Assembly: GCF_963853765.1 (NCBI RefSeq)
Contig: NC_088854.1
Span: 9,176,001 to 9,240,000, forward strand
Direction: 5' to 3'
DNA length: 64,000 nucleotides
Source of the DNA: Magallana gigas
Taxonomy: Eukaryota
Each line of letters begins with the position of its first letter. The stretch's first letter is position 1. This document shows, piece after piece, positions 29,009-39,790 of the stretch. A program made the position numbers and the translations under genes. The notes under the pieces were generated by a model, which was given only the letters and a program-made list of their open reading frames with translations, had not been told where the DNA came from and ran no database searches.

Positions 29009-31245
29009 TTAATTGTCACATCGACATTTCTGGTTGATACACTTCCATTCTGTGGTGCAGGTATAGGAATGGCGGTCACAGTCTCCTTTATCCAAACAAT
29101 CTACAACAAATCAAGGCTATTGTAAAGGAATCCGGATAAAATATACAGAATCATCGCTACTTGAGCAACCGAGCACAGCGATGAATGTATACTTGATTGA
29201 TTGCATGTTGTGCTACGTTCCTTTCGAGTACATTGTTTTCAAATTCAGACGTCAGTTCCGGTGGCGCTCCAGGTATGTAATGGTTTTTATCGTGCCAGAA
29301 CCTCTGATAAGGTAAATGACTTATGGAGGGTAGACACCTAGTTATAGAAATCCAAATTTAGCCTAATATATGTATTTCGTCCATAACCGCAAAAGGCATC
29401 GTCGCAAACCATGGCCGATATGTACGATCCTCTCCCATCTGAGAGAGCGATACGGACCCCGAACCATGGCTTAAGACGATGCTCAGTTATAATTTGGGGT
29501 CTTTAGTTACAGAGAAAATCCACTTGACTAGCAATGAAAATGAAAACTTTTGTACTCAGATGAAGAGACACGTAGCATCGTCTTTGAAAGTAGGGGGGGG
29601 GGGAGTGGCACACTCAACCAAAAACTCTTGACAAGCATGAAAAAGCCTCTTCCCAAAATCCTCGAAAATCCGAAGGGGGGGGGGGTATAACGCAAACTTC
29701 TATATTACTGTTTATTTCCTTATATATTTTCAATTCAATTTTTTACATGGCCCCATAAATAAAGGAGGGGGGGGGGCAACTTCATGTTCATTCATTTCTT
29801 TATATGTAAATTTAAGAAAAAATCTTTCCTGCGCCAACAAGTTGGCGGGGGGGGGGGGGGGGGAGAGGCTGTGTGTTTGCCCCCCCCCCCCCCCCCCACC
29901 TCCTCATGCTACGTGCCTGATGTATAATCCTGATCACATGTGTATGCACTTTTAATTCTTGCTGACAAAGCCTGTTCTAGAACTTTGACTATTATTACTT
30001 AATCATGAAGCGTCAGGTCCAGATATCAATGTAGTCAAGTAGATATGTTGTAATATTGCTCCGTTTTTGGCGCACATGATCCAACTTTAGACAAAATTAA
30101 ACACCTGTGTTCTAAAAAGGGACATCTATTCTAGTAATAAGCCCGTCCTTTGGTATTTTCTCAGACAAAACTGTGGGATACTCATACAACTGCCTTTGGA
30201 GACATGCACTAAAAATAGTTTCCCGGAAATATGTTACCCAAAAAGGCAAACGTTTAAGACTAAACGAACCTTTAAAAAATGAAAAAAAGTATTACATTGT
30301 TTGATCTTGTAATACTAGACAATGTTTAATAGTTACAATAAGGTTTGATATATTCTTCAATTCCAAAGTATAGAATATTTCCATTGATAAGGCCAAAGAG
30401 AACATTGTCGATGGACTGACTGCCTTAATGCACGAGTGTTTATATCACATCGAAACCGATGGATTTGGATTTTAACATTGTCGACATTGTATTTTGCATA
30501 ATTTAATTGGTTATGGGCTCTAGATAAATAAGACATGATGAGAATGGTGGATTTGGAAACATCTATTATATTTTGTAAAATACTACTGCTGGCCGCGCCC
30601 TGAGGCCACGACTTCACAGTTTTAGACCCCTGGGTGAGGGTCACGAGGATGTCAATTTCGGTTTCCTTCTTCCAACATACAACATTTTGTCCCGATTTAA
30701 TTGCTATGTAGTATTCAAAAAGAAAATTTTCAAAAGTTACACAAACAACATAGACAATGTAATTTACTCACGAATATCGTAGGGTGGGAGCGAGCAGGTA
30801 CAGATGCCGTGGACACACTCCAGGTTGGTGTGGTGGTTACAGACCGTGTCTATACAGCCACCGACCACCGTACAGTCCTCGGCCCTCGGCGCACCTGTCA
30901 ATCATAAAACGGCGCGGTACGTAAAATATCTGCAGTTTTGTTCGGAAATAGATCTATTTCATTATTTCTTCTTATGTGGAAAGGTGTGTTGTAATAGTTT
31001 ACACGACGTCAATTTTACAAAAAGCCAACAAAACAATACCAATCTTTCGTTACAGTTTCAAATAACATATAATGTACCCCCCCCCCCCCCCCCCAAAAAA
31101 AAAACAAAAAACAACAACCCGTAAAAACCGCGAACTATACAAAGATGAAAAAGATATAATCAAGTAATTAAAATTTACAAACGAATCAGAATACTTTACC
31201 AATTAATGCAGCAACGACAAAAGTACACAAAAGGATAGTCTTCAT
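29009..31245 (-). CDS. cvSI-2-like secreted 12-Cys protease inhibitor A, 86 aa
   Basis: Exons 31245-31200, 30894-30772 and 29100-29009, phases 1 and 1. Protein MKTILLCTFVVAALIGAPRAEDCTVVGGCIDTVCNHHTNLECVHGICTCSLPPYDIHCLDKGDCDRHSYTCTTEWKCINQKCRCDN. The family name rests on size, the 12-Cys spacing and recall of oyster cvSI-2. Confidence 0.82.
29569..29915. mobile_element. poly-G/poly-C-rich MITE
   Basis: TIR CACGTAGCAT / ATGCTACGTG enclosing several G9-G17 runs and one long C run. Confidence 0.7.
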
Positions 31246-31544: not shown

Positions 31545-31828
31545 ATGGGAATGTTGAAAGCTATTCTTTTTGTCTCACTTTTCGGTATGTATACTATTAT
31601 TTTCAGTCATATTCCATGTCCATTGTTACTGTTAGTGAAACTTTTGGAAATGAGTGTCTTCTTTTGAAACTATACGCTCTTGATGATATAGATAATCTTA
31701 CTTATAATTAAACCAGCTTTTCGTTGACCGAATGATATTATTAAGTAGCAACATAACTGAAGGTAGCTCATCACACCCATTTATTACTATATTGAATCTT
31801 GATGAATACTAGTATATGTTGTTTTTAC

Positions 31829-31889
<61 letters not shown>

Positions 31890-33547
31890 ACGTGTATGGA
31901 CATTATTTATTTTGTGTAGGTCTCTTTGCGGGAGAATCTTGTGTCAGCAAGTATGACTGCATTGATGTTGGATGTGTCCATCACACAACGGTGACGTGTG
32001 ATAACAACCTGTGCACCTGTACACCGATAACCGATGTTTACAGTAAGTATGCAGCTTCAGATATGGTCGAGTTCACAGTGAATATACAGCATCAGATATG
32101 GCCGAGTTTACAGTGAATAAATATCATCAGATATGATCGAGTTTACAGTAAGTATACAGCATCAGATATGGTCGGTGTGTACAGTAAGTATACAGTATCA
32201 GATATGGCCGAGTTTACAGTAAGTATACAGGATAAGACACCGGTATTACCAATATATATAAATGATATACAGCATCAGATATATAAAATATTTACTTGTT
32301 TACCAATACCTGGGTGTGTCAATCAAACTACAGTGACTTGTAATACCAATCTGTGTATCTATTCACCGATAACCGATATTTACAGTGAGTATACAAGCTC
32401 AGATAAGTGTATTTGTATACCAGAGACCAAAATGTTTACTAAATCATTGACAGTATGCAAGCAACAGATAATTGTATGTTTATTCAAATAATAAGTGAAT
32501 ATAAAACATGTATACATATATGTAAATGGTTACATTGTGTATACACCAATAGATAAGCATGTAAAACATGTATGCCAATAATTCATGTTTACAGATATGT
32601 GTACCATGCAGATATGCGTATATTTACATGTTCACTGATTACAATGAATTGACCGCTATGTACATATATATTTATTTATAACTACACTGATAATTGTTGT
32701 TTACGGTGTATACAGCAACAGCTGTGTATATATTTACATGTAAACTGAAAATCCTAGTTAACAGTGAGTATACAACTACAACTACAATAATAGCCGGTGT
32801 ATATACAGCGACATCTTTATTGCTTAAAACACTAGTAACTGAAGTTTACTGTGAGTTTACAGCAATGAAATAACAAATGTATTTACATGTACATGTACGC
32901 CAAAACCCAATGTGTACTGTCATAATTCAGCAGTGAAAATATCTACGTTATACCAATGTTTACGGAATAAACTGGATGAACTTATATTTTCACCTGCATA
33001 CTATTTACGTTTACAGCACGTATACAACAAAGTACATATTTATTGTTTTATTAATTACTTATGGTATCACTTTTGTATAGGGGTTTTCACATAGTAATTT
33101 TACAGCAAACTATCCACAAATCTACACACCAAAAACATGATAGAGGTTTCCCACTGAAATATAGTATACAGCGACTGTGCCTTCAGCCCTTTGTGTATAC
33201 TAGTATATCAAATTGATGTTTTAGGTCTTAAAATGAATGTCTTCTAGATTTTGTTGCTCAGCCTACATGTAGATAAAAGGCTAAAGGCAAAGTTTTTATT
33301 GTAATAGAATAAAATATATTTGGGCCAATTTTGGATGGATTGTCAATTTTGTGAAGGTTCGCGGGGATGGATACAGAAATAAAGTATTTGCGTAAATACA
33401 TACAATTTGACTTAAAAGTTCTATGTAAATCTTAACAAAGTACCCTCTTATATTTTAGGATGCCTGACCCCATCTGATTGTAAAAGGCACATCCACGTGT
33501 GTTCTACTGCGTGGGAATGCATACAGCAGCAATGCCGCTGTAAATGA
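31545..33547 (+). CDS. cvSI-2-like secreted 12-Cys protease inhibitor B, 83 aa
   Basis: Exons 31545-31584, 31920-32042 and 33459-33547, phases 1 and 1; exon 2 is 123 nt as in paralog A. Protein MGMLKAILFVSLFGLFAGESCVSKYDCIDVGCVHHTTVTCDNNLCTCTPITDVYRCLTPSDCKRHIHVCSTAWECIQQQCRCK. Confidence 0.82.
31830..31886. repeat. (CT)n microsatellite
   Basis: Uninterrupted CT run just upstream of the exon 2 acceptor. Confidence 0.98.
32030..32230 (+). repeat. 35-bp minisatellite containing the exon-2 splice donor
   Basis: Six units with ACA|GT(A/G)A at GT positions 32043, 32078, 32113, 32148, 32184 and 32219. Confidence 0.92.
32291..32384 (+). pseudogene. degenerate duplicate of inhibitor-B exon 2
   Basis: FTCLPIPGCVNQTTVTCNTNLCIYSPITDIY versus YDCIDVGCVHHTTVTCDNNLCTCTPITDVY. 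Donor GTGAGT at 32385. No phase-compatible acceptor found. Confidence 0.75.
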
Positions 33548-34156
33548 GTGTGTCTGTCTGTGACTGTAAATCCTGTATATCCTGTAATGTTTTCACCTTG
33601 AATTGCTCATTAAACAAAATAAATTTTTGAGACCTGACATTTCAACACTTTGTTAAAAAAGTAAAATTGCTATATACATGTAGATGCTTCATTATGAGGA
33701 TCTACTCAACAACGTCTTGATTAGACCAAAAAAGAAGTGAATTTAAATGGAAGTAAAACATCGCAAACACCTTTATAAAGCAAATACGATGAATAAGTCA
33801 AAAATAATACAATGGAGTTCTTCTAGTGCACTGTGATTTACATAAAGCTCCTTTATATAAAAAAATTAATACTAGTATCATTCTTAAAAATGGAGACGCA
33901 TGATAATGGCCATATTCAGATTATCATCGTATCGCATTGTTTATCAATCACCTGCAGTCTAAAGCGCAGGTATAAACATTACATAAAAATTAAACAGTAA
34001 AATAGTATAGCTCTGAGATAATGCAGTGATTTCTGTCACGTCAGCAATCTCTTATCTTAGCCTTTATCAAACATCACCATTCTGGTGTGCGTAAAATATC
34101 CATAATAATCACTTGATTTTAAAAATAAGATAAAGGGGTGATACAATAAATTATTT

Positions 34157-34306
34157 AAACAATAAAATGCTCTCTTTGGTGATTTATACAGGATATGAAG
34201 AAGGCGAAATTTCGTTAGCGGGTTATGTAATTTTTTTTGATTTTTTTTGCAATGATCGCTCCCTTCCTAACCTGCATGAACCACCAAAGAAAGCATTTTA
34301 TTGTTT
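34157..34306. repeat. degenerate foldback element
   Basis: Arms AAACAATAAAATGCTCTCTTTGGTG / CACCAAAGAAAGCATTTTATTGTTT. Confidence 0.65.
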
Positions 34307-34611
34307 ATATATTTACATCTTTCTTTTAACAAATTAACAAGCTGATCGTAAAAATTACGAAAATTAATTAAATTATGATTAACGTACATTATATCACATT
34401 AAAAAAACAGCCAAATCATCACCTATGTAAATTTAAGTCTGACATCATCATGATTATTTCGTGCAGTCCGTAATTATTTTTTTTGTGGCTGTAGGTTTCG
34501 ACCAATTGATAAACGGGGCGTGTAGATTTCAGTCATGTCAGTTTCTATTGTACGGTGTCCGGATAGGGCCATTTGCGTTAGCGCTACATCGCGTTTAGAA
34601 AAACGCGCCGC

Positions 34612-34806
34612 CGTGCTAACACAACTTTGCACAACGCGCCTTCCCGCTAAAACACAACACACCGTCGCGCTAACACAACACGGCGTTGCGCTAATTAACA
34701 CAGCACGCTGTCGAGCTAATCGAAAACATGCAGTTCGCTAACACACAGCATGTCGTCGCTATACACAACTTTGCACAACACGCAGTCGCGCTAACGCAAC
34801 TTTGCA
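34612..34806. repeat. GC-rich ~23-bp degenerate minisatellite (GCGCTAACACAAC core)
   Basis: About 8 units of (G)CGCTAACACAAC...; explains the spurious ORFs at 34474-34741. Confidence 0.8.
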
Positions 34807-35354
34807 GGTTTCACAGTTTATAGTAGGAAGTCGTGCCCGAAAACAACAGACTGCGCATTATGAAATATGTAAGCCTGCATGCAAGCATCGGTAAAATTCT
34901 AAAGAGCTATGAATTAACAATAAGTTTCCGTAGAAAATAGAGGGAATAATACCCGGCAGATGTAAATATTTTGGAATGATATGTTATAGTGACATGGTGT
35001 CAGAGTTTTGAGACGGTTTATAGAATTCCGCAATGTTACGTTCCATTCATATCAAAATCTTCAATAAATATGAATGATAGTTTTAATACACCTGTAAATT
35101 CTTCCTTTATTTTTTAAAGAATTCGTGATTTAGTAAATCCTATTTTAAAAAGTATCCTATCTGTGCCTGAGAGGCAACATTTTCATAAATTATGTAATAG
35201 CAATATCGAAAAAAAAAATATCATAAACGATCCCCGAGTCATGTGGCGGCCTAATATATTTTGCCTCAAAGGAAGAACAAATTAATATGCGCATTACATG
35301 TTAGAGTGTCGATGCACATAGCAACACAATAATGTCTTTAATTTTCCCCTCCAA

Positions 35355-35433
35355 TATATAAACTGCTCCGAGGTAGAGGGGCCCTCTACCCTCGCCTAAC
35401 CTCGACGGTCTAGACGTGCCTAACTTATCAAAG
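35355..35433 (+). promoter_or_regulatory. TATA box and non-coding first exon of the MCO-like gene
   Basis: TATATAAA at 35355-35362, donor AAAG|GTAAGG at 35434, and acceptor TTTAATAG immediately before ATG 35989. A GC hairpin (CGAGGTAGAGGG/CCCTCTACCCTCG) lies at the presumed start. Confidence 0.6.
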
Positions 35434-35988
35434 GTAAGGCGCATCTCACTATCTCATCAAATTGATTTGTTATAAAGACATTGATGAAGGACAAATAGAA
35501 AAAGCGTCAGGAAATAATTTAAGAAAATCTTCATCTCATTCGCCGATAAAAGCGGTGTTAAATTAATTGTATTGTAATGATGGTTGGCTTATTATTGCAA
35601 AAAGCAAATTATTGTTATCTGTGGAATCAGCATATTAAGGAAAATACATGAAAAAATACATGAAAATATCAGAAAAAAATTGATACTCTTTCCTCGTATT
35701 TCTTTAAGAAGGCGTATAATTTTTCTGATAAGTTTAAAGAAAATGGAGATCATAAACAATAAAAAGTAATAAATTATTATCCATTGAGATGTTGATGCAA
35801 ACTAAAGACCAAAGATATTATTCGTGTTATAAGAGATAGAAATATTTGCGTGGAATCAAACATACTTTAAACATTTTAAAGGTATATTGCGTATCAGTTA
35901 TAGCTATAGGAGGTTATGCTCCAAAACTAAACCCCTTGTAAAGGCACATTTCTGGCATCGGAACTGAATTAGCCTTATTTTTTAATAG

Positions 35989-38522
35989 ATGAGACTATCC
36001 TTAACCAGTTGTGTTGTATTAGTAATTCTTGGTGGAGCTATTGGGTTTCAATGCGACCAAAACGCAACGATATGCAGAACTTCTTTGGAAATCACCGAGA
36101 AACTAACCATGTTTCACGAAACTGAAAAAGCCGTCTACGCGAAAAATGGTTCTTTATATAGATATGACGTAACAGACATCAACCTTGCCAGACCCGTGAA
36201 CTCTGGTGAAGTTATCGCGGGAGATGGGTGGGAAAAGCAAAGAATGGTGGTTGTTGCCAATGGTACCTTACCAGGACCCCCTATCGTTGCCTACAAAGGT
36301 CAGGTTCTAGTAATTCACGTCAAGAACTCGCTCCCGTCTGATACCGTTTCTGTGCATTGGTACGGGATAGAGCAAAGAGGTACCCCTTATATGGACGGAG
36401 CAAGCTTCATCACCCAATGCCCCATCAATCCCGGCCAAACCTTCACGTACACATTCAGAGTTGATGAAAGTGGTACTTACTGGTACCATTCAAGCGCAGG
36501 CGCACAGAGAGGTAAGGGATTGTATGGGGCTTTGATAGTTCTGGATCGAGAGCCTCCGGCTAATTTAGATAAAGTCGATGGCGACTTTGTTCTACAGATA
36601 CAGGACTGGAATCATGATTACGATGCTGAACAAGGTTATATGCTTTCTAAAGACGGGGTTTATGAGAATAGGAGCCAAATCTTGACGACAAGATTGCCAA
36701 GAGGACGAAACAATTCTCTTTGGAACGCTCATTCGTCACTGATCAATGGAAACGGACGGTATTATGACCCTCAAACCGGGAAACACAACGAAGCACCTCT
36801 GCGGGATTTCAAGGTTCAGGAAGGAAAAAGCTACAGATTTCGCGTTATAAACGCAGCCTCTGTTTACTCATACAGAGTTTCAGTGGACGGGCACAATATA
36901 ACCATCATTGCCTCTGACGGCAAAATGGTCGTACCTGTCGAGGTAGAATCGTTTTGGGTTCATCCCGGAGAGAGATTCGACTTTTTATTAGAAGCCACTG
37001 CAAGAAGAGGAAAATACATGATTCGTGGAGTTGCAGAAGATGCCATCAACCCGATACCCGCCGAAGCTGTTTTGCATTACCTCGGAGCACGACCAGATGT
37101 TGATATAAACTCTGAAAGGTCTCAGTGTAACGAGACTGAGCCATGTACAGTGTTAAATTGTCCATTTCAATTTTATCTAAATAATCCAAAACTTCGATGT
37201 CTTGCCATTGAAGAATTAGTTTCTGATGTATCAAATGTAATTCCTGAGTACCAAGAAAGTCACTTCCAGGAGTTCTTTTTGAATTTTGCTATACCAGGGG
37301 CAGAAACCTATCCCGCCACCGTTAACAACGTCCAGTTTTTACAACCAACTGTTTCGGCCCTATCCCAGCCTAATGAAATCGTAAAACCCTGCTCTAAAAG
37401 TGGCTGTAAAGGGAACGAAACATGTACGTGTACAAATATCCTAGATGTGATTCATAACAACACCGTCCAATTCGTGTTCATGAACATGGGTAAGAGACAA
37501 ACATCGCACACTATCAGCATGCATGGACATTCCTTCTATGTTTTGAAAATGGGATTTGCTAATTATAACGAAACAACTGGCGAATATATTTCACAGAATG
37601 AAGATATAAAATGCGAAGGCAATGCTACCGAGGATGAAGCCTTTTGCAACAAGCCATCATGGACTAATCCCGAATGGCGCAACGGAAACGTCTCGGGTTT
37701 GAATCTTGTCGACCCCCCGCAGAAGGATACCGTTGTAGTCCCGTACGGTGGGTACGTTGTACTGCGTATCAAGGCCGACAACCCTGGGTTTTGGATGATA
37801 AAAAGTAATTCTCTCCCCGAATCACTGAACGGAATGGCCGTACTTATGAACGAATCTTTCTCGTATTTGCCAGATGTTCCTAAAAATTTCCCAACCTGCA
37901 GGAACTTTGAAGGCATAGATCCAGGTAAGAATGTACAAACTGTTTGACTGCTTTTTTAAATCGTGATTTGATTTTTGTAAAGTATAAGTTCAATTAATGA
38001 CCTGATTATTAATGTTGACAGATGTTCTTTGGACGACACCTGAACCTGTGACGACCACGCCCATACCTACAACAACCGAACCATCCAGTAAGTATATCAA
38101 CGCTCATTGTAAAAGAGTCAGCTGATCACATCCTTTTGTCATGTTGTAAATTTTGAATTTACTGAGACCCACCCAGTAAATTCAAAATTTACAACCTGGC
38201 ACATCGGGAAGTATTTGTTAGCGAAGTTTATTAAAGACAATATTAAATTAAAACGAAGTAATACTATTTCATTACCCTGAATTATACGAGAGTAGTACAC
38301 TTCGGAAGGTATTCTTTCCGCATAGTGATGGTTCCTTCTTAGAAGAGAGTAGGTAGGTATTATGTACATCATGCGTAGAATAAGGGTAAATATATATATT
38401 TTTTTATCTCCATAGCTTGCGTGACTTCCGGAGACTGCCATCGTCACACCTGGAATAACGACAACTGTCTACACAAGTGGGAGTGTATCAACGGAATCTG
38501 TCACTGCAATTCTAGTACATGA
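35989..38522 (+). CDS. laccase-like multicopper-oxidase homolog lacking most Cu ligands, with Thr/Pro stalk and C-terminal cvSI-2-type six-Cys module, 702 aa
   Basis: Exons 35989-37924, 38022-38087 and 38416-38522, phases 1 and 1, total 2109 nt. Signal peptide and three cupredoxin domains (NGTLPGPPI, TQCPINPG, YRFRVINA, DTVVVP.GG, ADNPG.W). Confidence 0.88.
38143..38195. repeat. perfect 22-bp-stem hairpin in the last intron of the MCO-like gene
   Basis: GTTGTAAATTTTGAATTTACTG-agacccacc-CAGTAAATTCAAAATTTACAAC. Confidence 0.9.
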
Positions 38523-39130
38523 GTCCTCACTGTTAAGTCGCCGTACTGTTACTGAATGCCGTATAAAGAGACTAGAAAGTGCCTTCTTTTTACCCTCATG
38601 TGTAATGCAATTGTAGCATTTTACAATCAACAGATTTGAACAATTATAAGATTAGGTTTTCGTTGTTTCTATTTCTAGAATTTATAATTATCACCGTGAC
38701 ATAAACAAATGCCGGATTTATACATTAAGTGAAACAATGTAGCATGTATACAGTAAAGATGACATTATCATATCAATTTGATTTATTTCTTATTCAAACT
38801 TGGTATATTCTCAATTATTGAATGATTGAAAAACTGAATGAAAATGTTAGGTCATCTCATGGTCCAGCTATTTTCCATGGCCTCTTTGTTCCATCTTATT
38901 TGAATGAGTTGTTTGAACCTTATTTCAACGTCAAAGTATTCAAGTTCAAAGATTTTGACAATCAAGTTCTATCTGTATACCATTATCTGTACAAGGAAGG
39001 AACCAAGAAGAATTTCTACATTTTGCTGACATCCAATAATAATGCTAATAAAATTAGAAAAAAAACTAGTTCAATTCACAAATGAATATTTATTTGCTCC
39101 ATGTTTAACGCCTTCCATGAAGTATACTTT

Positions 39131-39433
39131 TTATACTTTCTCCTGATACTCCCAGTCCGGATCCCCCGGGGGTCGGTATACTCTCTGTCCGTGGTCCCAG
39201 TCAGGGTCATTCGGGGGTCTGTATATTGACCTACTTTGTCGTGATCTGTCCTGTCGCTTCTGGGTGTGGATTTCTGTCCCATCAGGGGGAGGGAGGTACT
39301 GTTTTGTCTGTAAGCCATGGTGAGGGTGATAGCATGGAGGGTCATAGCAAATTATACCATCACGGGCGGGATAACCGAGGATTGTGGCGACCGTTAAAAC
39401 CAGAGCAGTCAATATGATGGAAGCTCTGCTCAT
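39131..39433 (-). CDS. small secreted prepropeptide-like protein with two YRPPxDPDW repeats, 100 aa
   Basis: Signal peptide MSRASIILTALVLTVATILG, then CYDPPC, a KR site and a 15-aa repeat. Coding-like GC content against an AT-rich background. TATA-like element near 39517-39530 on the minus strand. Confidence 0.75.
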   Translation of the reverse strand: MSRASIILTALVLTVATILGYPARDGIICYDPPCYHPHHGLQTKQYLPPPDGTEIHTQKRQDRSRQSRSIYRPPNDPDWDHGQRVYRPPGDPDWEYQEKV

Positions 39434-39790
39434 CTTATAGCCTGAAATATTTAAAATACGTACCGCTAAATCTCTCACAGCACTGGTCTCTACTCTCTAC
39501 ATTTCAACGTTGATACTATAGATATATAGCTATGATGCTTCGAATTCCTTTCCAACTGTCTGTCTCTGTCCTTTTTATGTCAGTACATATTGTATGTCCA
39601 ACTTGACTTTGAGAATCGATTTAGAGATTTTTATGGCAAAGTAAACAAGTTTAAATTTCATCAATTTTTTAAAATGTAAGTGTAAAGGTAAACCCTTCAC
39701 ATGATCAGTCCCGAGTTACAACTTATTTATACAACAATTTATATTCTCCCTCGTTTCACTTCTCCGAAAATAAAAAGAATTCGACCTTAT

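What the first reader, a model, noticed from the sequence alone, without database searches (positions are those of the whole stretch)
36355..37836. Intact laccase-like ORF that has lost 7 of 11 copper ligands (pseudo-enzyme)
Seen: L1 HWHG->HWYG (36355-36366), L2 WYHSH->WYHSS (36481-36495), L3 HPxHLHGH->HTISMHGH (37507-37530) and L4 HCHxxxH->KSNSLPE (37801-37821); the axial Met is kept. The type-1 Cys and His, one type-2 His and four type-3 His are gone. Several substitutions need two nucleotide changes, yet 645 codons stay free of stops and frameshifts and are rich in N-glycosylation sequons. Known: these motifs are required for MCO catalysis, and ligand-deficient relatives exist in plants (SKU5/SKS) and mosquitoes (MCORP). 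Inference: long-term selection for the fold rather than for oxidase activity; possibly a separate molluscan origin of a non-catalytic MCO.
Basis: partly seen in the sequence, partly recalled or inferred. Interest (0 to 1): 0.75.

Follow-up and report, generated by a model that had tools for sequence, protein, structure and literature searches.

The report
Copper-less oyster laccase with inhibitor tail
The Pacific oyster expresses and conserves a secreted laccase-fold protein that has lost 7 of its 11 copper-binding residues and carries half of an oyster protease inhibitor at its end, so it is a naturally evolved 'dead enzyme' kept for some non-oxidase job.

Summary
Of 17 full-length paralogues in the genome 14 keep all 11, as do 107 of 114 lophotrochozoan homologues.

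It is not a decaying copy:
- It is transcribed, polyadenylated and spliced.
- dN/dS against a congeneric orthologue with the same seven losses is 0.20-0.25 (p about 1e-20).
- Polymorphism is 20 synonymous to 9 nonsynonymous.
- The modelled fold is a confident laccase.

Corrections and additions:
- The real protein has 702 residues. The ORF's last 7 codons are intron. Two small exons add a Thr/Pro linker and a 6-Cys tail.
- The tail is homologous to the second module of MEROPS I84 (cvSI-type) serine-protease inhibitors, and I84 genes lie directly upstream in three oyster genera.
- Ligand loss is staged. The C. virginica and O. edulis orthologues keep 10/11, under selection. Magallana and Saccostrea collapsed independently.

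Most likely it is a secreted non-catalytic scaffold or binder. A role in defence or protease control is only inferred. It is a new variant of the SKU5/MCORP kind, arisen independently.

The parts
35357..35433 (+). Exon 1, non-coding 5'UTR
   Evidence: Spliced Logan transcript contigs L036-L038 map here and then jump to 35987/35989. An RNA contig shows the joint 35431>35987 with GT..AG.
35989..37924 (+). Exon 2: start codon plus 645 codons (and 1 nt) encoding the signal peptide and the whole three-domain MCO body
   Evidence: ORF listing, Pfam, transcript mapping, and a CCAG|GTAAGA donor after 37924.
35989..36048 (+). Predicted signal peptide (about 20 residues, hydrophobic core). The boundary is approximate and read from the sequence.
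   Evidence: Translation. The AF2 model has an N-terminal helix at residues 2-14 with lower pLDDT.
36235..36552 (+). Cupredoxin domain 1 (Pfam Cu-oxidase_3, aa 83-188), containing L1 and L2
   Evidence: PF07732, E 2e-38.
36355..36366 (+). L1 HWYG: T2 His kept, T3 His replaced by Tyr
36481..36495 (+). L2 WYHSS: first T3 His kept, second replaced by Ser (two nucleotide changes)
36682..37086 (+). Cupredoxin domain 2 (Pfam Cu-oxidase, aa 232-366)
   Evidence: PF00394, E 1e-31.
37393..37854 (+). Cupredoxin domain 3 (Pfam Cu-oxidase_2, aa 469-622), containing L3 and L4
   Evidence: PF07731, E 3e-26.
37507..37530 (+). L3 HTISMHGH: T1 His kept, T2 His replaced by Ser, T3 His kept
37801..37836 (+). L4 KSNSLPE...M: His-Cys-His replaced by Lys-Ser-Asn, T1 His replaced by Glu, axial Met kept
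37925..38021 (+). Intron (97 nt, phase 1).
   Evidence: The joint 37924>38022 (GT..AG) is seen in 8 and 6 raw polyA RNA reads and in two RNA contigs.
38022..38087 (+). Exon 3: Thr/Pro-rich linker of 22 codons, probably O-glycosylated (inference)
   Evidence: It is conserved in the C. virginica, O. edulis and S. echinata orthologues.
38416..38522 (+). Exon 4 coding part: a 6-Cys module homologous to module 2 (exon 3) of MEROPS I84 serine-protease inhibitors, with the stop at 38520-38522
   Evidence: BLASTP against the S. echinata 'Cvsi-2-like' protein gives E 4e-8, and 5e-14 for the O. edulis tail. Six Cys and D-C-x-R-H are invariant in alignment A3. Intron position and phase are the same as in the neighbouring I84 gene.
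38523..38774 (+). 3'UTR. Sense-strand raw-read depth falls to zero in the next bin (38775-38913). Some assembled contigs run on to 39065-39381, where a convergent minus-strand transcript overlaps.
   Evidence: Depth table and contig pieces.
31545..33547 (+). Neighbouring I84 (cvSI-2-like) inhibitor gene A: three exons with phase-1 introns. It is a likely source, or a relative of the source, of the tail exon.
29009..31245 (-). Neighbouring I84 inhibitor gene B, head-to-head with gene A

Best explanation
This is a functional gene of Magallana gigas (NCBI 'laccase-4', 702 aa). It encodes a secreted, glycosylated protein that keeps the three-cupredoxin laccase fold but can no longer assemble the type-1 copper or the trinuclear copper cluster, so it is not an oxidase. 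It is a chimera of signal peptide, MCO body, Thr/Pro stalk and one 6-Cys module captured from an adjacent family-I84 (cvSI-type) serine-protease-inhibitor gene.

The fusion arose in the oyster (Ostreidae) ancestor after duplication of an intact laccase, on a fast-evolving stem branch. The copper sites were still kept under selection in the Crassostrea virginica and Ostrea edulis lineages (10 of 11 ligands each). They collapsed completely, and independently, in Magallana and in Saccostrea. The rest of the Magallana protein stayed as constrained as before.

Shown: identity, gene structure, expression, ligand loss, purifying selection, fold, tail homology and synteny. Inferred: the selected function is a copper-independent binding or scaffold role that predates the ligand loss. 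It most likely acts outside the cell, with the stalked I84 module as the interacting or targeting end. My guess is humoral defence or protease control alongside the neighbouring I84 inhibitors; I give that specific role about 0.3.
For: - **Family and fold:** Pfam finds three MCO domains. The AF2 model has pLDDT 89.4 and pTM 0.88, with the body at 95-98. The best Foldseek match is termite laccase 8r7i, E 6e-46.
- **Ligands:** 4/11 remain, against 11/11 in 14 of 17 paralogues and 107 of 114 homologues.
- **Expression and splicing:** spliced 702-aa transcripts occur in four Logan run assemblies. Stranded polyA raw reads cover the exons, splice joints are seen, and intron 3 has depth 0. The model equals XP_011455858.2 apart from a few polymorphic residues.
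- **Selection:** against the 91%-identical congeneric orthologue, which has the same 7 losses, dN is 0.046, dS is 0.18-0.22 and omega is 0.20-0.25. Fisher's test gives p 1.7e-20. SNPs are 20 synonymous to 9 nonsynonymous, p 8e-8.
- **Clade:** the five defective orthologues form a clade with 100% support on a stem of 0.38, sister to an intact oyster clade. The clade has about 2.5 times more unique changes than the intact sister clade.
- **Staged loss:** C. virginica has the T1 His replaced by Asp. O. edulis has a T3 His replaced by Gln. S. echinata has 7 different losses.
- **Ligand retention:** keeping the other 10 ligands under neutrality has P about 6e-11 (C. virginica) and 4e-8 (O. edulis).
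- **No general speed-up:** M. gigas and C. virginica have 66 and 69 lineage-specific changes (p 0.8). Magallana-specific changes are enriched near the ligands (12/66, p 0.036).
- **Tail:** homology, identical intron phase and position, and I84 genes upstream in M. gigas, C. virginica and S. echinata but absent from the intact-paralogue loci fetched.
- **Precedent:** an insect MCO homologue lacking His-Cys-His had no oxidase activity and almost no copper (PMC4203857).
Against: - No biochemical data exist for this protein. Loss of activity is inferred from the ligands and from the MCORP precedent.
- Four His and the axial Met remain and could bind a metal in some other way.
- The tissue, the binding partners and whether the tail binds any protease are all unknown.
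- The tail is modelled with low confidence (pLDDT 50-59).
- It is only half of an I84 inhibitor, and the reactive site of I84 inhibitors is not described in the paper I read (PMC9198434).
- Deep dS values are saturated (1.7-2.6), so only the Magallana pair gives a reliable omega.
- The species behind the 91% orthologue (run SRR14865004) was not identified.
Confidence: 0.72

Rival explanations
1. The MCO body is a non-catalytic structural or matrix glycoprotein (shell, periostracum, mucus or extracellular matrix). The Cys-rich tail serves only as a matrix-anchoring knot, in the way the intact paralogues use a transmembrane anchor or a ShK-like tail. On this reading it has nothing to do with proteases.
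For: The architecture is a body, a Thr/Pro stalk and a small disulfide knot. Paralogues carry alternative C-terminal anchoring devices: a TM helix in P0020 and L012, and a ShK-like Cys tail in P0169 and P0163. There is no evidence that half of an I84 inhibitor inhibits anything.
Against: The tail keeps all six Cys and the D-C-x-R-H motif of genuine I84 modules across more than four genera. The gene stays linked to I84 genes, which hints at a shared context. No localisation data were found.
Confidence: 0.15
2. The protein is still a metalloprotein with redox or metal-handling activity that uses the remaining His123, His167, His507, His512 and Met616 plus new ligands (Tyr125, Glu611, Lys605). 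That would make it a re-engineered metal site and not a dead one.
For: Four His and the axial Met are kept in both Magallana species, and the seven replacement residues are identical in both. The P of that under neutrality is about 0.035 and 0.15, which is weak. The C. virginica and O. edulis orthologues evidently keep copper sites under selection with one unusual ligand each.
Against: The T1 Cys and the whole His-Cys-His electron-transfer triplet are gone, and 4 of 6 T3 ligands and one T2 ligand are gone. The insect analogue with a similar pattern had no activity and about 6% copper occupancy (PMC4203857). The overall omega of 0.2 already explains the identity of the replacement residues.
Confidence: 0.1
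3. A recently disabled gene copy on its way to becoming a pseudogene. The open frame would be a matter of time and chance.
For: The clade evolves about 2.5 times faster than its intact sister clade. Genuinely broken MCO copies exist in the same genome (L018/L019, with in-frame stops).
Against: Omega is 0.20-0.25 across an unsaturated dS of about 0.2 since the losses (p 1.7e-20). pN/pS is about 0.13. Every sequence read from the 351 + 51 clustered sequences of two species is intact. Splicing is correct and the mRNA is polyadenylated. There is no rate increase relative to C. virginica.
Confidence: 0.03

Closest known systems
Insect multicopper oxidase-related protein (MCORP; PMC4203857)
   Same: An animal three-domain MCO homologue that has lost the His-Cys-His triplet and most T1 and T3 ligands, is conserved among related species, and is presumed or shown to be non-catalytic.
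   Different: MCORP keeps both T2 His, has an N-terminal signal anchor (membrane-bound), and was found only in insects. The oyster protein keeps only one T2 His, has a cleavable-looking signal peptide and a C-terminal I84-type Cys module, and nests inside molluscan laccases, so its origin is independent.
Plant SKU5/SKS and Bp10 ascorbate-oxidase-like proteins (PMC10315306; cited in PMC4203857)
   Same: Extracellular glycoproteins with the MCO fold that lack T1 and T3 ligands and act by an unknown non-classical mechanism.
   Different: They are GPI-anchored, keep both T2 His, form an old and large plant family related to ascorbate oxidase, and have no protease-inhibitor module.
Intact oyster laccase paralogue (window genome L002, NCBI XP_011415244; C. 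virginica LOC111107109)
   Same: Sister clade, 55-56% identical, with the same single large coding exon and the same three domains, and also secreted.
   Different: It keeps all 11 ligands, carries a different (ShK-like) Cys tail, evolves about 2.5 times more slowly, and is not next to I84 genes.
MEROPS family I84 serine-protease inhibitors (cvSI-1, cvSI-2; PMC9198434)
   Same: The tail exon shares the six-Cys pattern, the D-C-x-R-H motif, 43-54% identity, and the intron position and phase with module 2 of these mollusc-specific inhibitors. I84 genes are the immediate upstream neighbours.
   Different: I84 inhibitors are free peptides of about 8 kDa with two different 6-Cys modules (12 Cys). 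Here only module 2 is present, attached to a 70-kDa MCO body by a Thr/Pro stalk. Inhibition is untested.
Coagulation factors V and VIII A domains (from my own knowledge, not tested here)
   Same: Ceruloplasmin-type MCO folds that gave up oxidase chemistry and serve as protein-binding cofactors in an extracellular protease cascade.
   Different: They are six-domain vertebrate proteins with no sequence relationship closer than the superfamily. This is only an analogy for how a dead MCO fold can work.

Membership tests
Three-domain multicopper oxidase (laccase-like) superfamily | Three cupredoxin domains in the order Cu-oxidase_3, Cu-oxidase, Cu-oxidase_2 | tested here: met
   Pfam E-values are 2e-38, 1e-31 and 3e-26, all above the gathering score. 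Foldseek against laccases gives E 6e-46 and TM 0.75-0.84 by target.
Three-domain multicopper oxidase (laccase-like) superfamily | Ten His and one Cys in motifs L1-L4 that bind four copper ions | tested here: not met
   Only 4 of 11 are present.
Three-domain multicopper oxidase (laccase-like) superfamily | Oxidase activity coupled to O2 reduction | not testable with these tools
   This needs recombinant protein, metal analysis and activity assays.
Ligand-deficient MCO homologues of the MCORP or SKU5 type | MCO-like sequence lacking the His-Cys-His triplet and most T1 and T3 ligands, yet conserved | tested here: met
   KSN replaces HCH, omega is 0.20-0.25, and the protein is conserved in a second species.
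Ligand-deficient MCO homologues of the MCORP or SKU5 type | Both T2 histidines retained | tested here: not met
   H123 is kept but the L3 T2 His is Ser510. The feature is described in PMC4203857.
Ligand-deficient MCO homologues of the MCORP or SKU5 type | Common descent with insect MCORP or plant SKS, and their anchoring (signal anchor or GPI) | tested here: not met
   The tree nests the protein within bivalve laccases, sister to an intact oyster clade. It has an N-terminal signal peptide and a C-terminal Cys module, with no hydrophobic C-terminus. No insect or plant sequences were put in the tree.
MEROPS I84 protease inhibitors | Module-2 cysteine array (C-x5-7-C-x3-6-C-x5-8-C-x4-C-x-C) with sequence similarity | tested here: met
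   All six Cys and D-C-x-R-H are invariant across 4 tails and 4 I84 modules. BLASTP gives E 4e-8 to 5e-14. The loop between Cys2 and Cys3 is lengthened to 10 residues in M. gigas.
MEROPS I84 protease inhibitors | Twelve Cys in two different modules on a secreted peptide of about 70 residues | tested here: not met
   Only the second module is present, fused to a 645-residue MCO body.
MEROPS I84 protease inhibitors | Gene structure in which a phase-1 intron precedes the module-2 exon | tested here: met
   In neighbour gene A and in the laccase gene the intron falls after the first base of the codon just before Cys1. The paper reports type-1 introns for the family (PMC9198434).
MEROPS I84 protease inhibitors | Inhibition of subtilisin-type serine proteases | not testable with these tools

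The most novel reading that the evidence does not exclude
The oyster 'laccase-4' clade is a natural, dated series of an enzyme turning into a pseudoenzyme. An intact laccase first captured an exon of a neighbouring immune protease inhibitor and gained a copper-independent job. It then kept near-complete copper sites for tens of millions of years in Crassostrea and Ostrea, and finally lost them wholesale twice, in Magallana and in Saccostrea, without any change in constraint on the rest of the protein. If so, the new binding function came before and permitted the catalytic death. The protein would then define a new kind of humoral factor that joins an MCO scaffold to an I84 module. Together with the separate 'HSQ' lineage (L012) and L007, oysters would hold at least three independent pseudo-MCO origins.
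Probability: 0.4. Interest if true: 0.72.

Novelty: new variant of a known kind. Interest (0 to 1): 0.62.

Why it matters
Non-catalytic relatives of enzymes are common, but how they arise is rarely visible. Here the living species preserve the steps: an intact sister gene, two orthologues with one odd ligand each that are still under selection, and two lineages with seven ligands gone by different substitutions. That makes a long-standing question testable with four recombinant proteins: does the new function come first, or does catalytic death? The protein is also the first case I could find of a multicopper-oxidase fold fused to a module of the mollusc-specific I84 protease inhibitors, a family linked to resistance of oysters to Perkinsus (PMC9198434). 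The gene may therefore matter for oyster immunity and aquaculture. On the practical side, databases call it 'laccase-4', and counts of oyster 'laccases' or phenoloxidase genes that include it, or the L012-type genes, overstate the number of catalytic genes.

Tried and rejected
- **Complex prediction:** I submitted the tail (residues 660-702) with subtilisin Carlsberg. The tool did not fold it because it does not pair eukaryote chains with microbial ones. There is no verdict, and I did not try another route.
- **ESM Atlas:** a feature search with the tail gave no usable hit.
- **Pfam on the tail:** only sub-threshold matches were found (late nodulin, EB, scorpion short toxin). I did not use these for any claim.
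- **PDB sequence search with the I84 peptide:** nothing significant.
- **Exact look-up of P0009's coding contig:** failed. I replaced it with the NCBI C. virginica member P0149.
- **First call for sequencing runs:** failed because the tool was busy. The repeat worked.
- **Literature:** ten searches found no paper on this gene, on ligand-deficient molluscan MCOs or on an MCO-I84 fusion. The library does not hold most subscription journals, so this is not proof of absence.
- **Earlier scan findings:** nothing was returned.
- **N-glycosylation as a special feature:** rejected. Paralogues range from 0.5 to 2.9 sequons per 100 aa and this protein has 2.0.
- **The 788-aa UniProt model** that fuses the upstream I84 gene to this gene: rejected as the main form. 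The transcripts start at a separate 5'UTR exon, and one contig carries adaptor sequence at 35395.
- **General relaxation after ligand loss in Magallana:** rejected, 66 against 69 unique changes.
- **Branch-model codon tests (PAML or HyPhy):** these programs were not available, so none were run. Deep dS is saturated, so only pairwise and relative-rate tests were used.
Full report
**What is there.** Window 35989-37947 (+) is an uninterrupted 652-codon ORF with an N-terminal signal-like hydrophobic stretch. It stands out as a GC-richer block (0.43 against about 0.33) in AT-rich surroundings. Pfam finds the three multicopper-oxidase (MCO) domains in canonical order, well above threshold. The best solved relatives are laccases and ascorbate oxidase. 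The window is chromosome-scale contig C2:9176001-9240000 of a 564-Mb genome. Cluster members name the gene as Magallana (Crassostrea) gigas 'laccase-4', XP_011455858.2, 702 aa.

**Check of the observation.** Residue-by-residue alignments to solved laccases, to the 16 other full-length paralogues of the same genome and to 113 homologues put them opposite the canonical ligands. In the order T2, T3, T3, T3, T1, T2, T3, T3, Cys, T3, T1, Met, the ligand string reads H Y H S H S H K S N E M, so 4 of 11 ligands plus the axial Met remain. Compared with the His codons of the orthologues, four of the seven replacements need two nucleotide changes. The loss is far from background: 14 of 17 paralogues and 107 of 114 lophotrochozoan homologues have all 11. 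Apart from two truncated sequences, every exception in that set belongs to this gene's own orthologue clade. The sequon count (13, or 2.0 per 100 aa) is not unusual for the family.

**Gene model.** The ORF's last seven codons are intron read-through. Spliced transcript contigs from four run assemblies (L036-L039) encode 702 aa and map as four exons:
- 35357-35433: 5'UTR.
- 35989-37924: 645 codons plus one base.
- 38022-38087: linker.
- 38416 onward: coding to the stop at 38520-38522, then 3'UTR.

Stranded polyA raw reads from two 2026 runs cover the exons with first mates on the minus strand. They show the 37924>38022 joint (GT..AG) in 8 and 6 reads and have zero depth in intron 3. RNA contigs show the other two joints. 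RNA runs hold 0.66-0.71 of the sampled words of 35700-38700, and DNA-like runs hold 0.90-0.97. That is what spliced mRNA should give, because 76% of that stretch is exon. The gene is therefore transcribed, polyadenylated and correctly spliced.

**Is it decaying?** No.
- A congeneric orthologue from run SRR14865004 (L031) is 91% identical in protein and 89.7% in DNA including introns. It carries exactly the same seven replacements and an intact tail exon.
- Over 645 codons dN is 0.046 and dS is 0.18-0.22, so omega is 0.20-0.25. There are 66 nonsynonymous changes on 1510 sites and 82 synonymous on 425 sites, Fisher p 1.7e-20.
- Variants seen in the RNA reads are 20 synonymous to 9 nonsynonymous, and all nine are conservative. 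That is p 8e-8 against the neutral 3.55:1 site ratio.
- The same-species cluster has 351 sequences and the sister-species cluster 51. Every member I read is open.
- The AlphaFold model built on 114 sequences is confident (mean pLDDT 89.4, pTM 0.88, body mostly 95-98). It superposes on laccases, best on termite laccase 8r7i with E 6e-46.
- By contrast, the same genome holds a really broken MCO copy with in-frame stops (L018/L019).

**Phylogeny and the order of events.**
- In a maximum-likelihood tree the M. gigas protein, its congener, C. virginica LOC111127532, O. edulis LOC130051743 and S. echinata LOC133192695 form a clade with 100% SH-aLRT support on a long stem (0.38). The clade is sister to an intact, slower oyster clade (L002 type) with members from C. 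virginica, Saccostrea cucullata and O. edulis. The duplication therefore predates the oyster radiation.
- Relative-rate tests give about 2.5 times more unique changes in the defective clade (119 against 47, p 2e-8).
- The ligand states differ by lineage. C. virginica lacks only the last T1 His (Asp). O. edulis lacks only the second T3 His of the His-Cys-His triplet (Gln). S. echinata has seven losses, six of them at other positions or to other residues than in Magallana, plus Met to Ile.
- Gln607 uses the same CAA codon in Ostrea and Saccostrea. Asp/Glu611 is shared by Crassostrea and Magallana. This suggests two separate first hits.
- The ten remaining ligands of C. virginica and O. edulis cannot have survived by chance. 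With the estimated dS, P is about 6e-11 and 4e-8. This is a rough calculation on saturated dS. Those proteins therefore very probably still bind copper, and the full collapse is derived, once in Magallana and once in Saccostrea.
- The M. gigas lineage shows no overall acceleration relative to C. virginica (66 against 69 unique changes, p 0.8). Its lineage-specific changes are enriched within five residues of the ligands (12 of 66 against 10% expected, p 0.036). Saccostrea is moderately faster than Ostrea (71 against 47, p 0.03).
- The constraint on the rest of the Magallana protein thus does not depend on the copper sites.

**The tail.**
- All orthologues share a Thr/Pro linker and a six-Cys C-terminal module that the intact paralogues lack. 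The same module occurs four more times just upstream in the window.
- A search with the upstream peptide returned a Saccostrea protein annotated 'serine protease inhibitor Cvsi-2-like' (77% identity). This is MEROPS family I84: mollusc-specific secreted peptides of about 8 kDa with 12 Cys in two different six-Cys modules. The modules are encoded by exons 2 and 3, the genes have phase-1 introns, and the family is implicated in defence against Perkinsus (PMC9198434).
- The laccase tails align with module 2. The O. edulis tail gives 54% identity and E 5e-14, and the M. gigas tail 43% and E 4e-8. Six Cys and D-C-x-R-H are invariant in all eight sequences compared.
- The intron before the tail exon has the same phase and the same position (one codon before Cys1) as in the neighbouring I84 gene.
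- I84 genes lie directly upstream on the same strand in M. gigas, C. virginica and S. echinata. None lies within 5 kb in O. edulis, and none in the intact-paralogue loci fetched.
- The simplest reading is capture of an I84 exon by the adjacent MCO gene in the oyster ancestor.

**How it probably works.**
- Shown: it is a secreted-type, expressed and conserved laccase fold that lacks the type-1 Cys, the His-Cys-His electron path, four of six T3 ligands and one T2 ligand.
- From established MCO chemistry, and from the insect MCORP experiment (no activity, about 6% copper occupancy; PMC4203857), it cannot be a conventional oxidase.
- Inferred: its selected function is binding or scaffolding that predates the ligand loss. 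The stalked I84 module is the most likely interacting or targeting end, and the setting is extracellular. A role in humoral defence or protease control is suggested only by the module's ancestry and by the conserved linkage to I84 genes. I rate it at about 0.3.
- The rivals are a matrix-anchored structural glycoprotein, a re-engineered metal site and incipient pseudogenisation. They are listed with their odds.

**Comparison with what is known.** In kind it matches insect MCORP and plant SKU5/SKS, which are conserved ligand-deficient MCO homologues. It fails their membership tests: only one T2 His is kept, the anchoring differs, and it nests inside molluscan laccases. It is therefore an independent origin. 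It is not an I84 inhibitor either, because it has one module of two on a 70-kDa body. I found no paper describing it, any molluscan pseudo-MCO, or an MCO-I84 fusion, within the limits of the library.

**Verdict.** It is a new variant of a known kind. Its interest lies in the preserved stepwise series and the domain capture, not in the existence of a dead MCO as such.

Noticed in passing
window 29009-31245 (-) and 31545-33547 (+): Two head-to-head three-exon genes for family-I84 (cvSI-2-like) serine-protease inhibitors. Their start codons are about 300 bp apart, and each has a signal-peptide exon and two 6-Cys module exons with phase-1 introns. A degenerate extra module-1-like stretch lies at about 32312-32404.
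   Followed up: partly
G000:C8:15124505-15126358 (L012) and its orthologues P0184-P0190: A second, independent ligand-deficient MCO lineage. His-Ser-Gln replaces His-Cys-His and one L2 His is Gln (7-8 of 11 ligands). The pattern is shared by M. gigas, two C. virginica genes (LOC111102118 and LOC111102119) and other clusters. The nearest S. echinata homologue is intact. The protein has a C-terminal transmembrane helix. A 93-member Logan cluster shows the sequence recurs in many public run assemblies.
   Followed up: partly
G000:C4:8651678-8653495 (L007), 5 kb from the intact L006: A third ligand-deficient paralogue (6 of 11; WYYST and HSL...Q) on a very long branch (1.28). The frame is open, but it has no obvious start or signal peptide in the same exon. 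I did not determine whether it is a fast-evolving gene or a young pseudogene.
   Followed up: no
window 31545-37924; UniProt A0A8W8KRV8 (P0122): A 788-aa database model fuses the upstream I84 gene to the laccase gene. Assembled transcripts instead start at a separate 5'UTR exon (35357-35433), and one RNA contig carries adaptor sequence at 35395. The fused model is therefore probably a read-through or a prediction artefact.
   Followed up: partly
window 38134-38167 (intron 3): A short inverted-repeat element that attracts reads and contigs from elsewhere in the genome, with both strands, strand-switch joints and many different loose ends. It looks like part of a multi-copy MITE-like repeat.
   Followed up: no
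window 39050-39480 (-): RNA reads of the opposite orientation (first mates on +) cover this stretch. It holds minus-strand ORFs rich in Pro, Asp and Arg with short repeats. A convergent gene's transcript appears to overlap the long 3'UTR isoforms of the laccase gene.
   Followed up: no
G000:C1:42087061-42088823 (L018/L019): A broken MCO copy with in-frame TGA and TAA stops, next to intact paralogues L014 and L015. It is a true pseudogene in the same family and a useful contrast to the gene studied.
   Followed up: no
P0169 / P0163 (L002 clade), C-terminal about 40 residues: The intact sister paralogues end in a different Cys-rich tail that looks ShK-toxin-like by eye. Other paralogues end in a transmembrane helix. 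Oyster MCOs seem to swap C-terminal anchoring or targeting modules freely.
   Followed up: no
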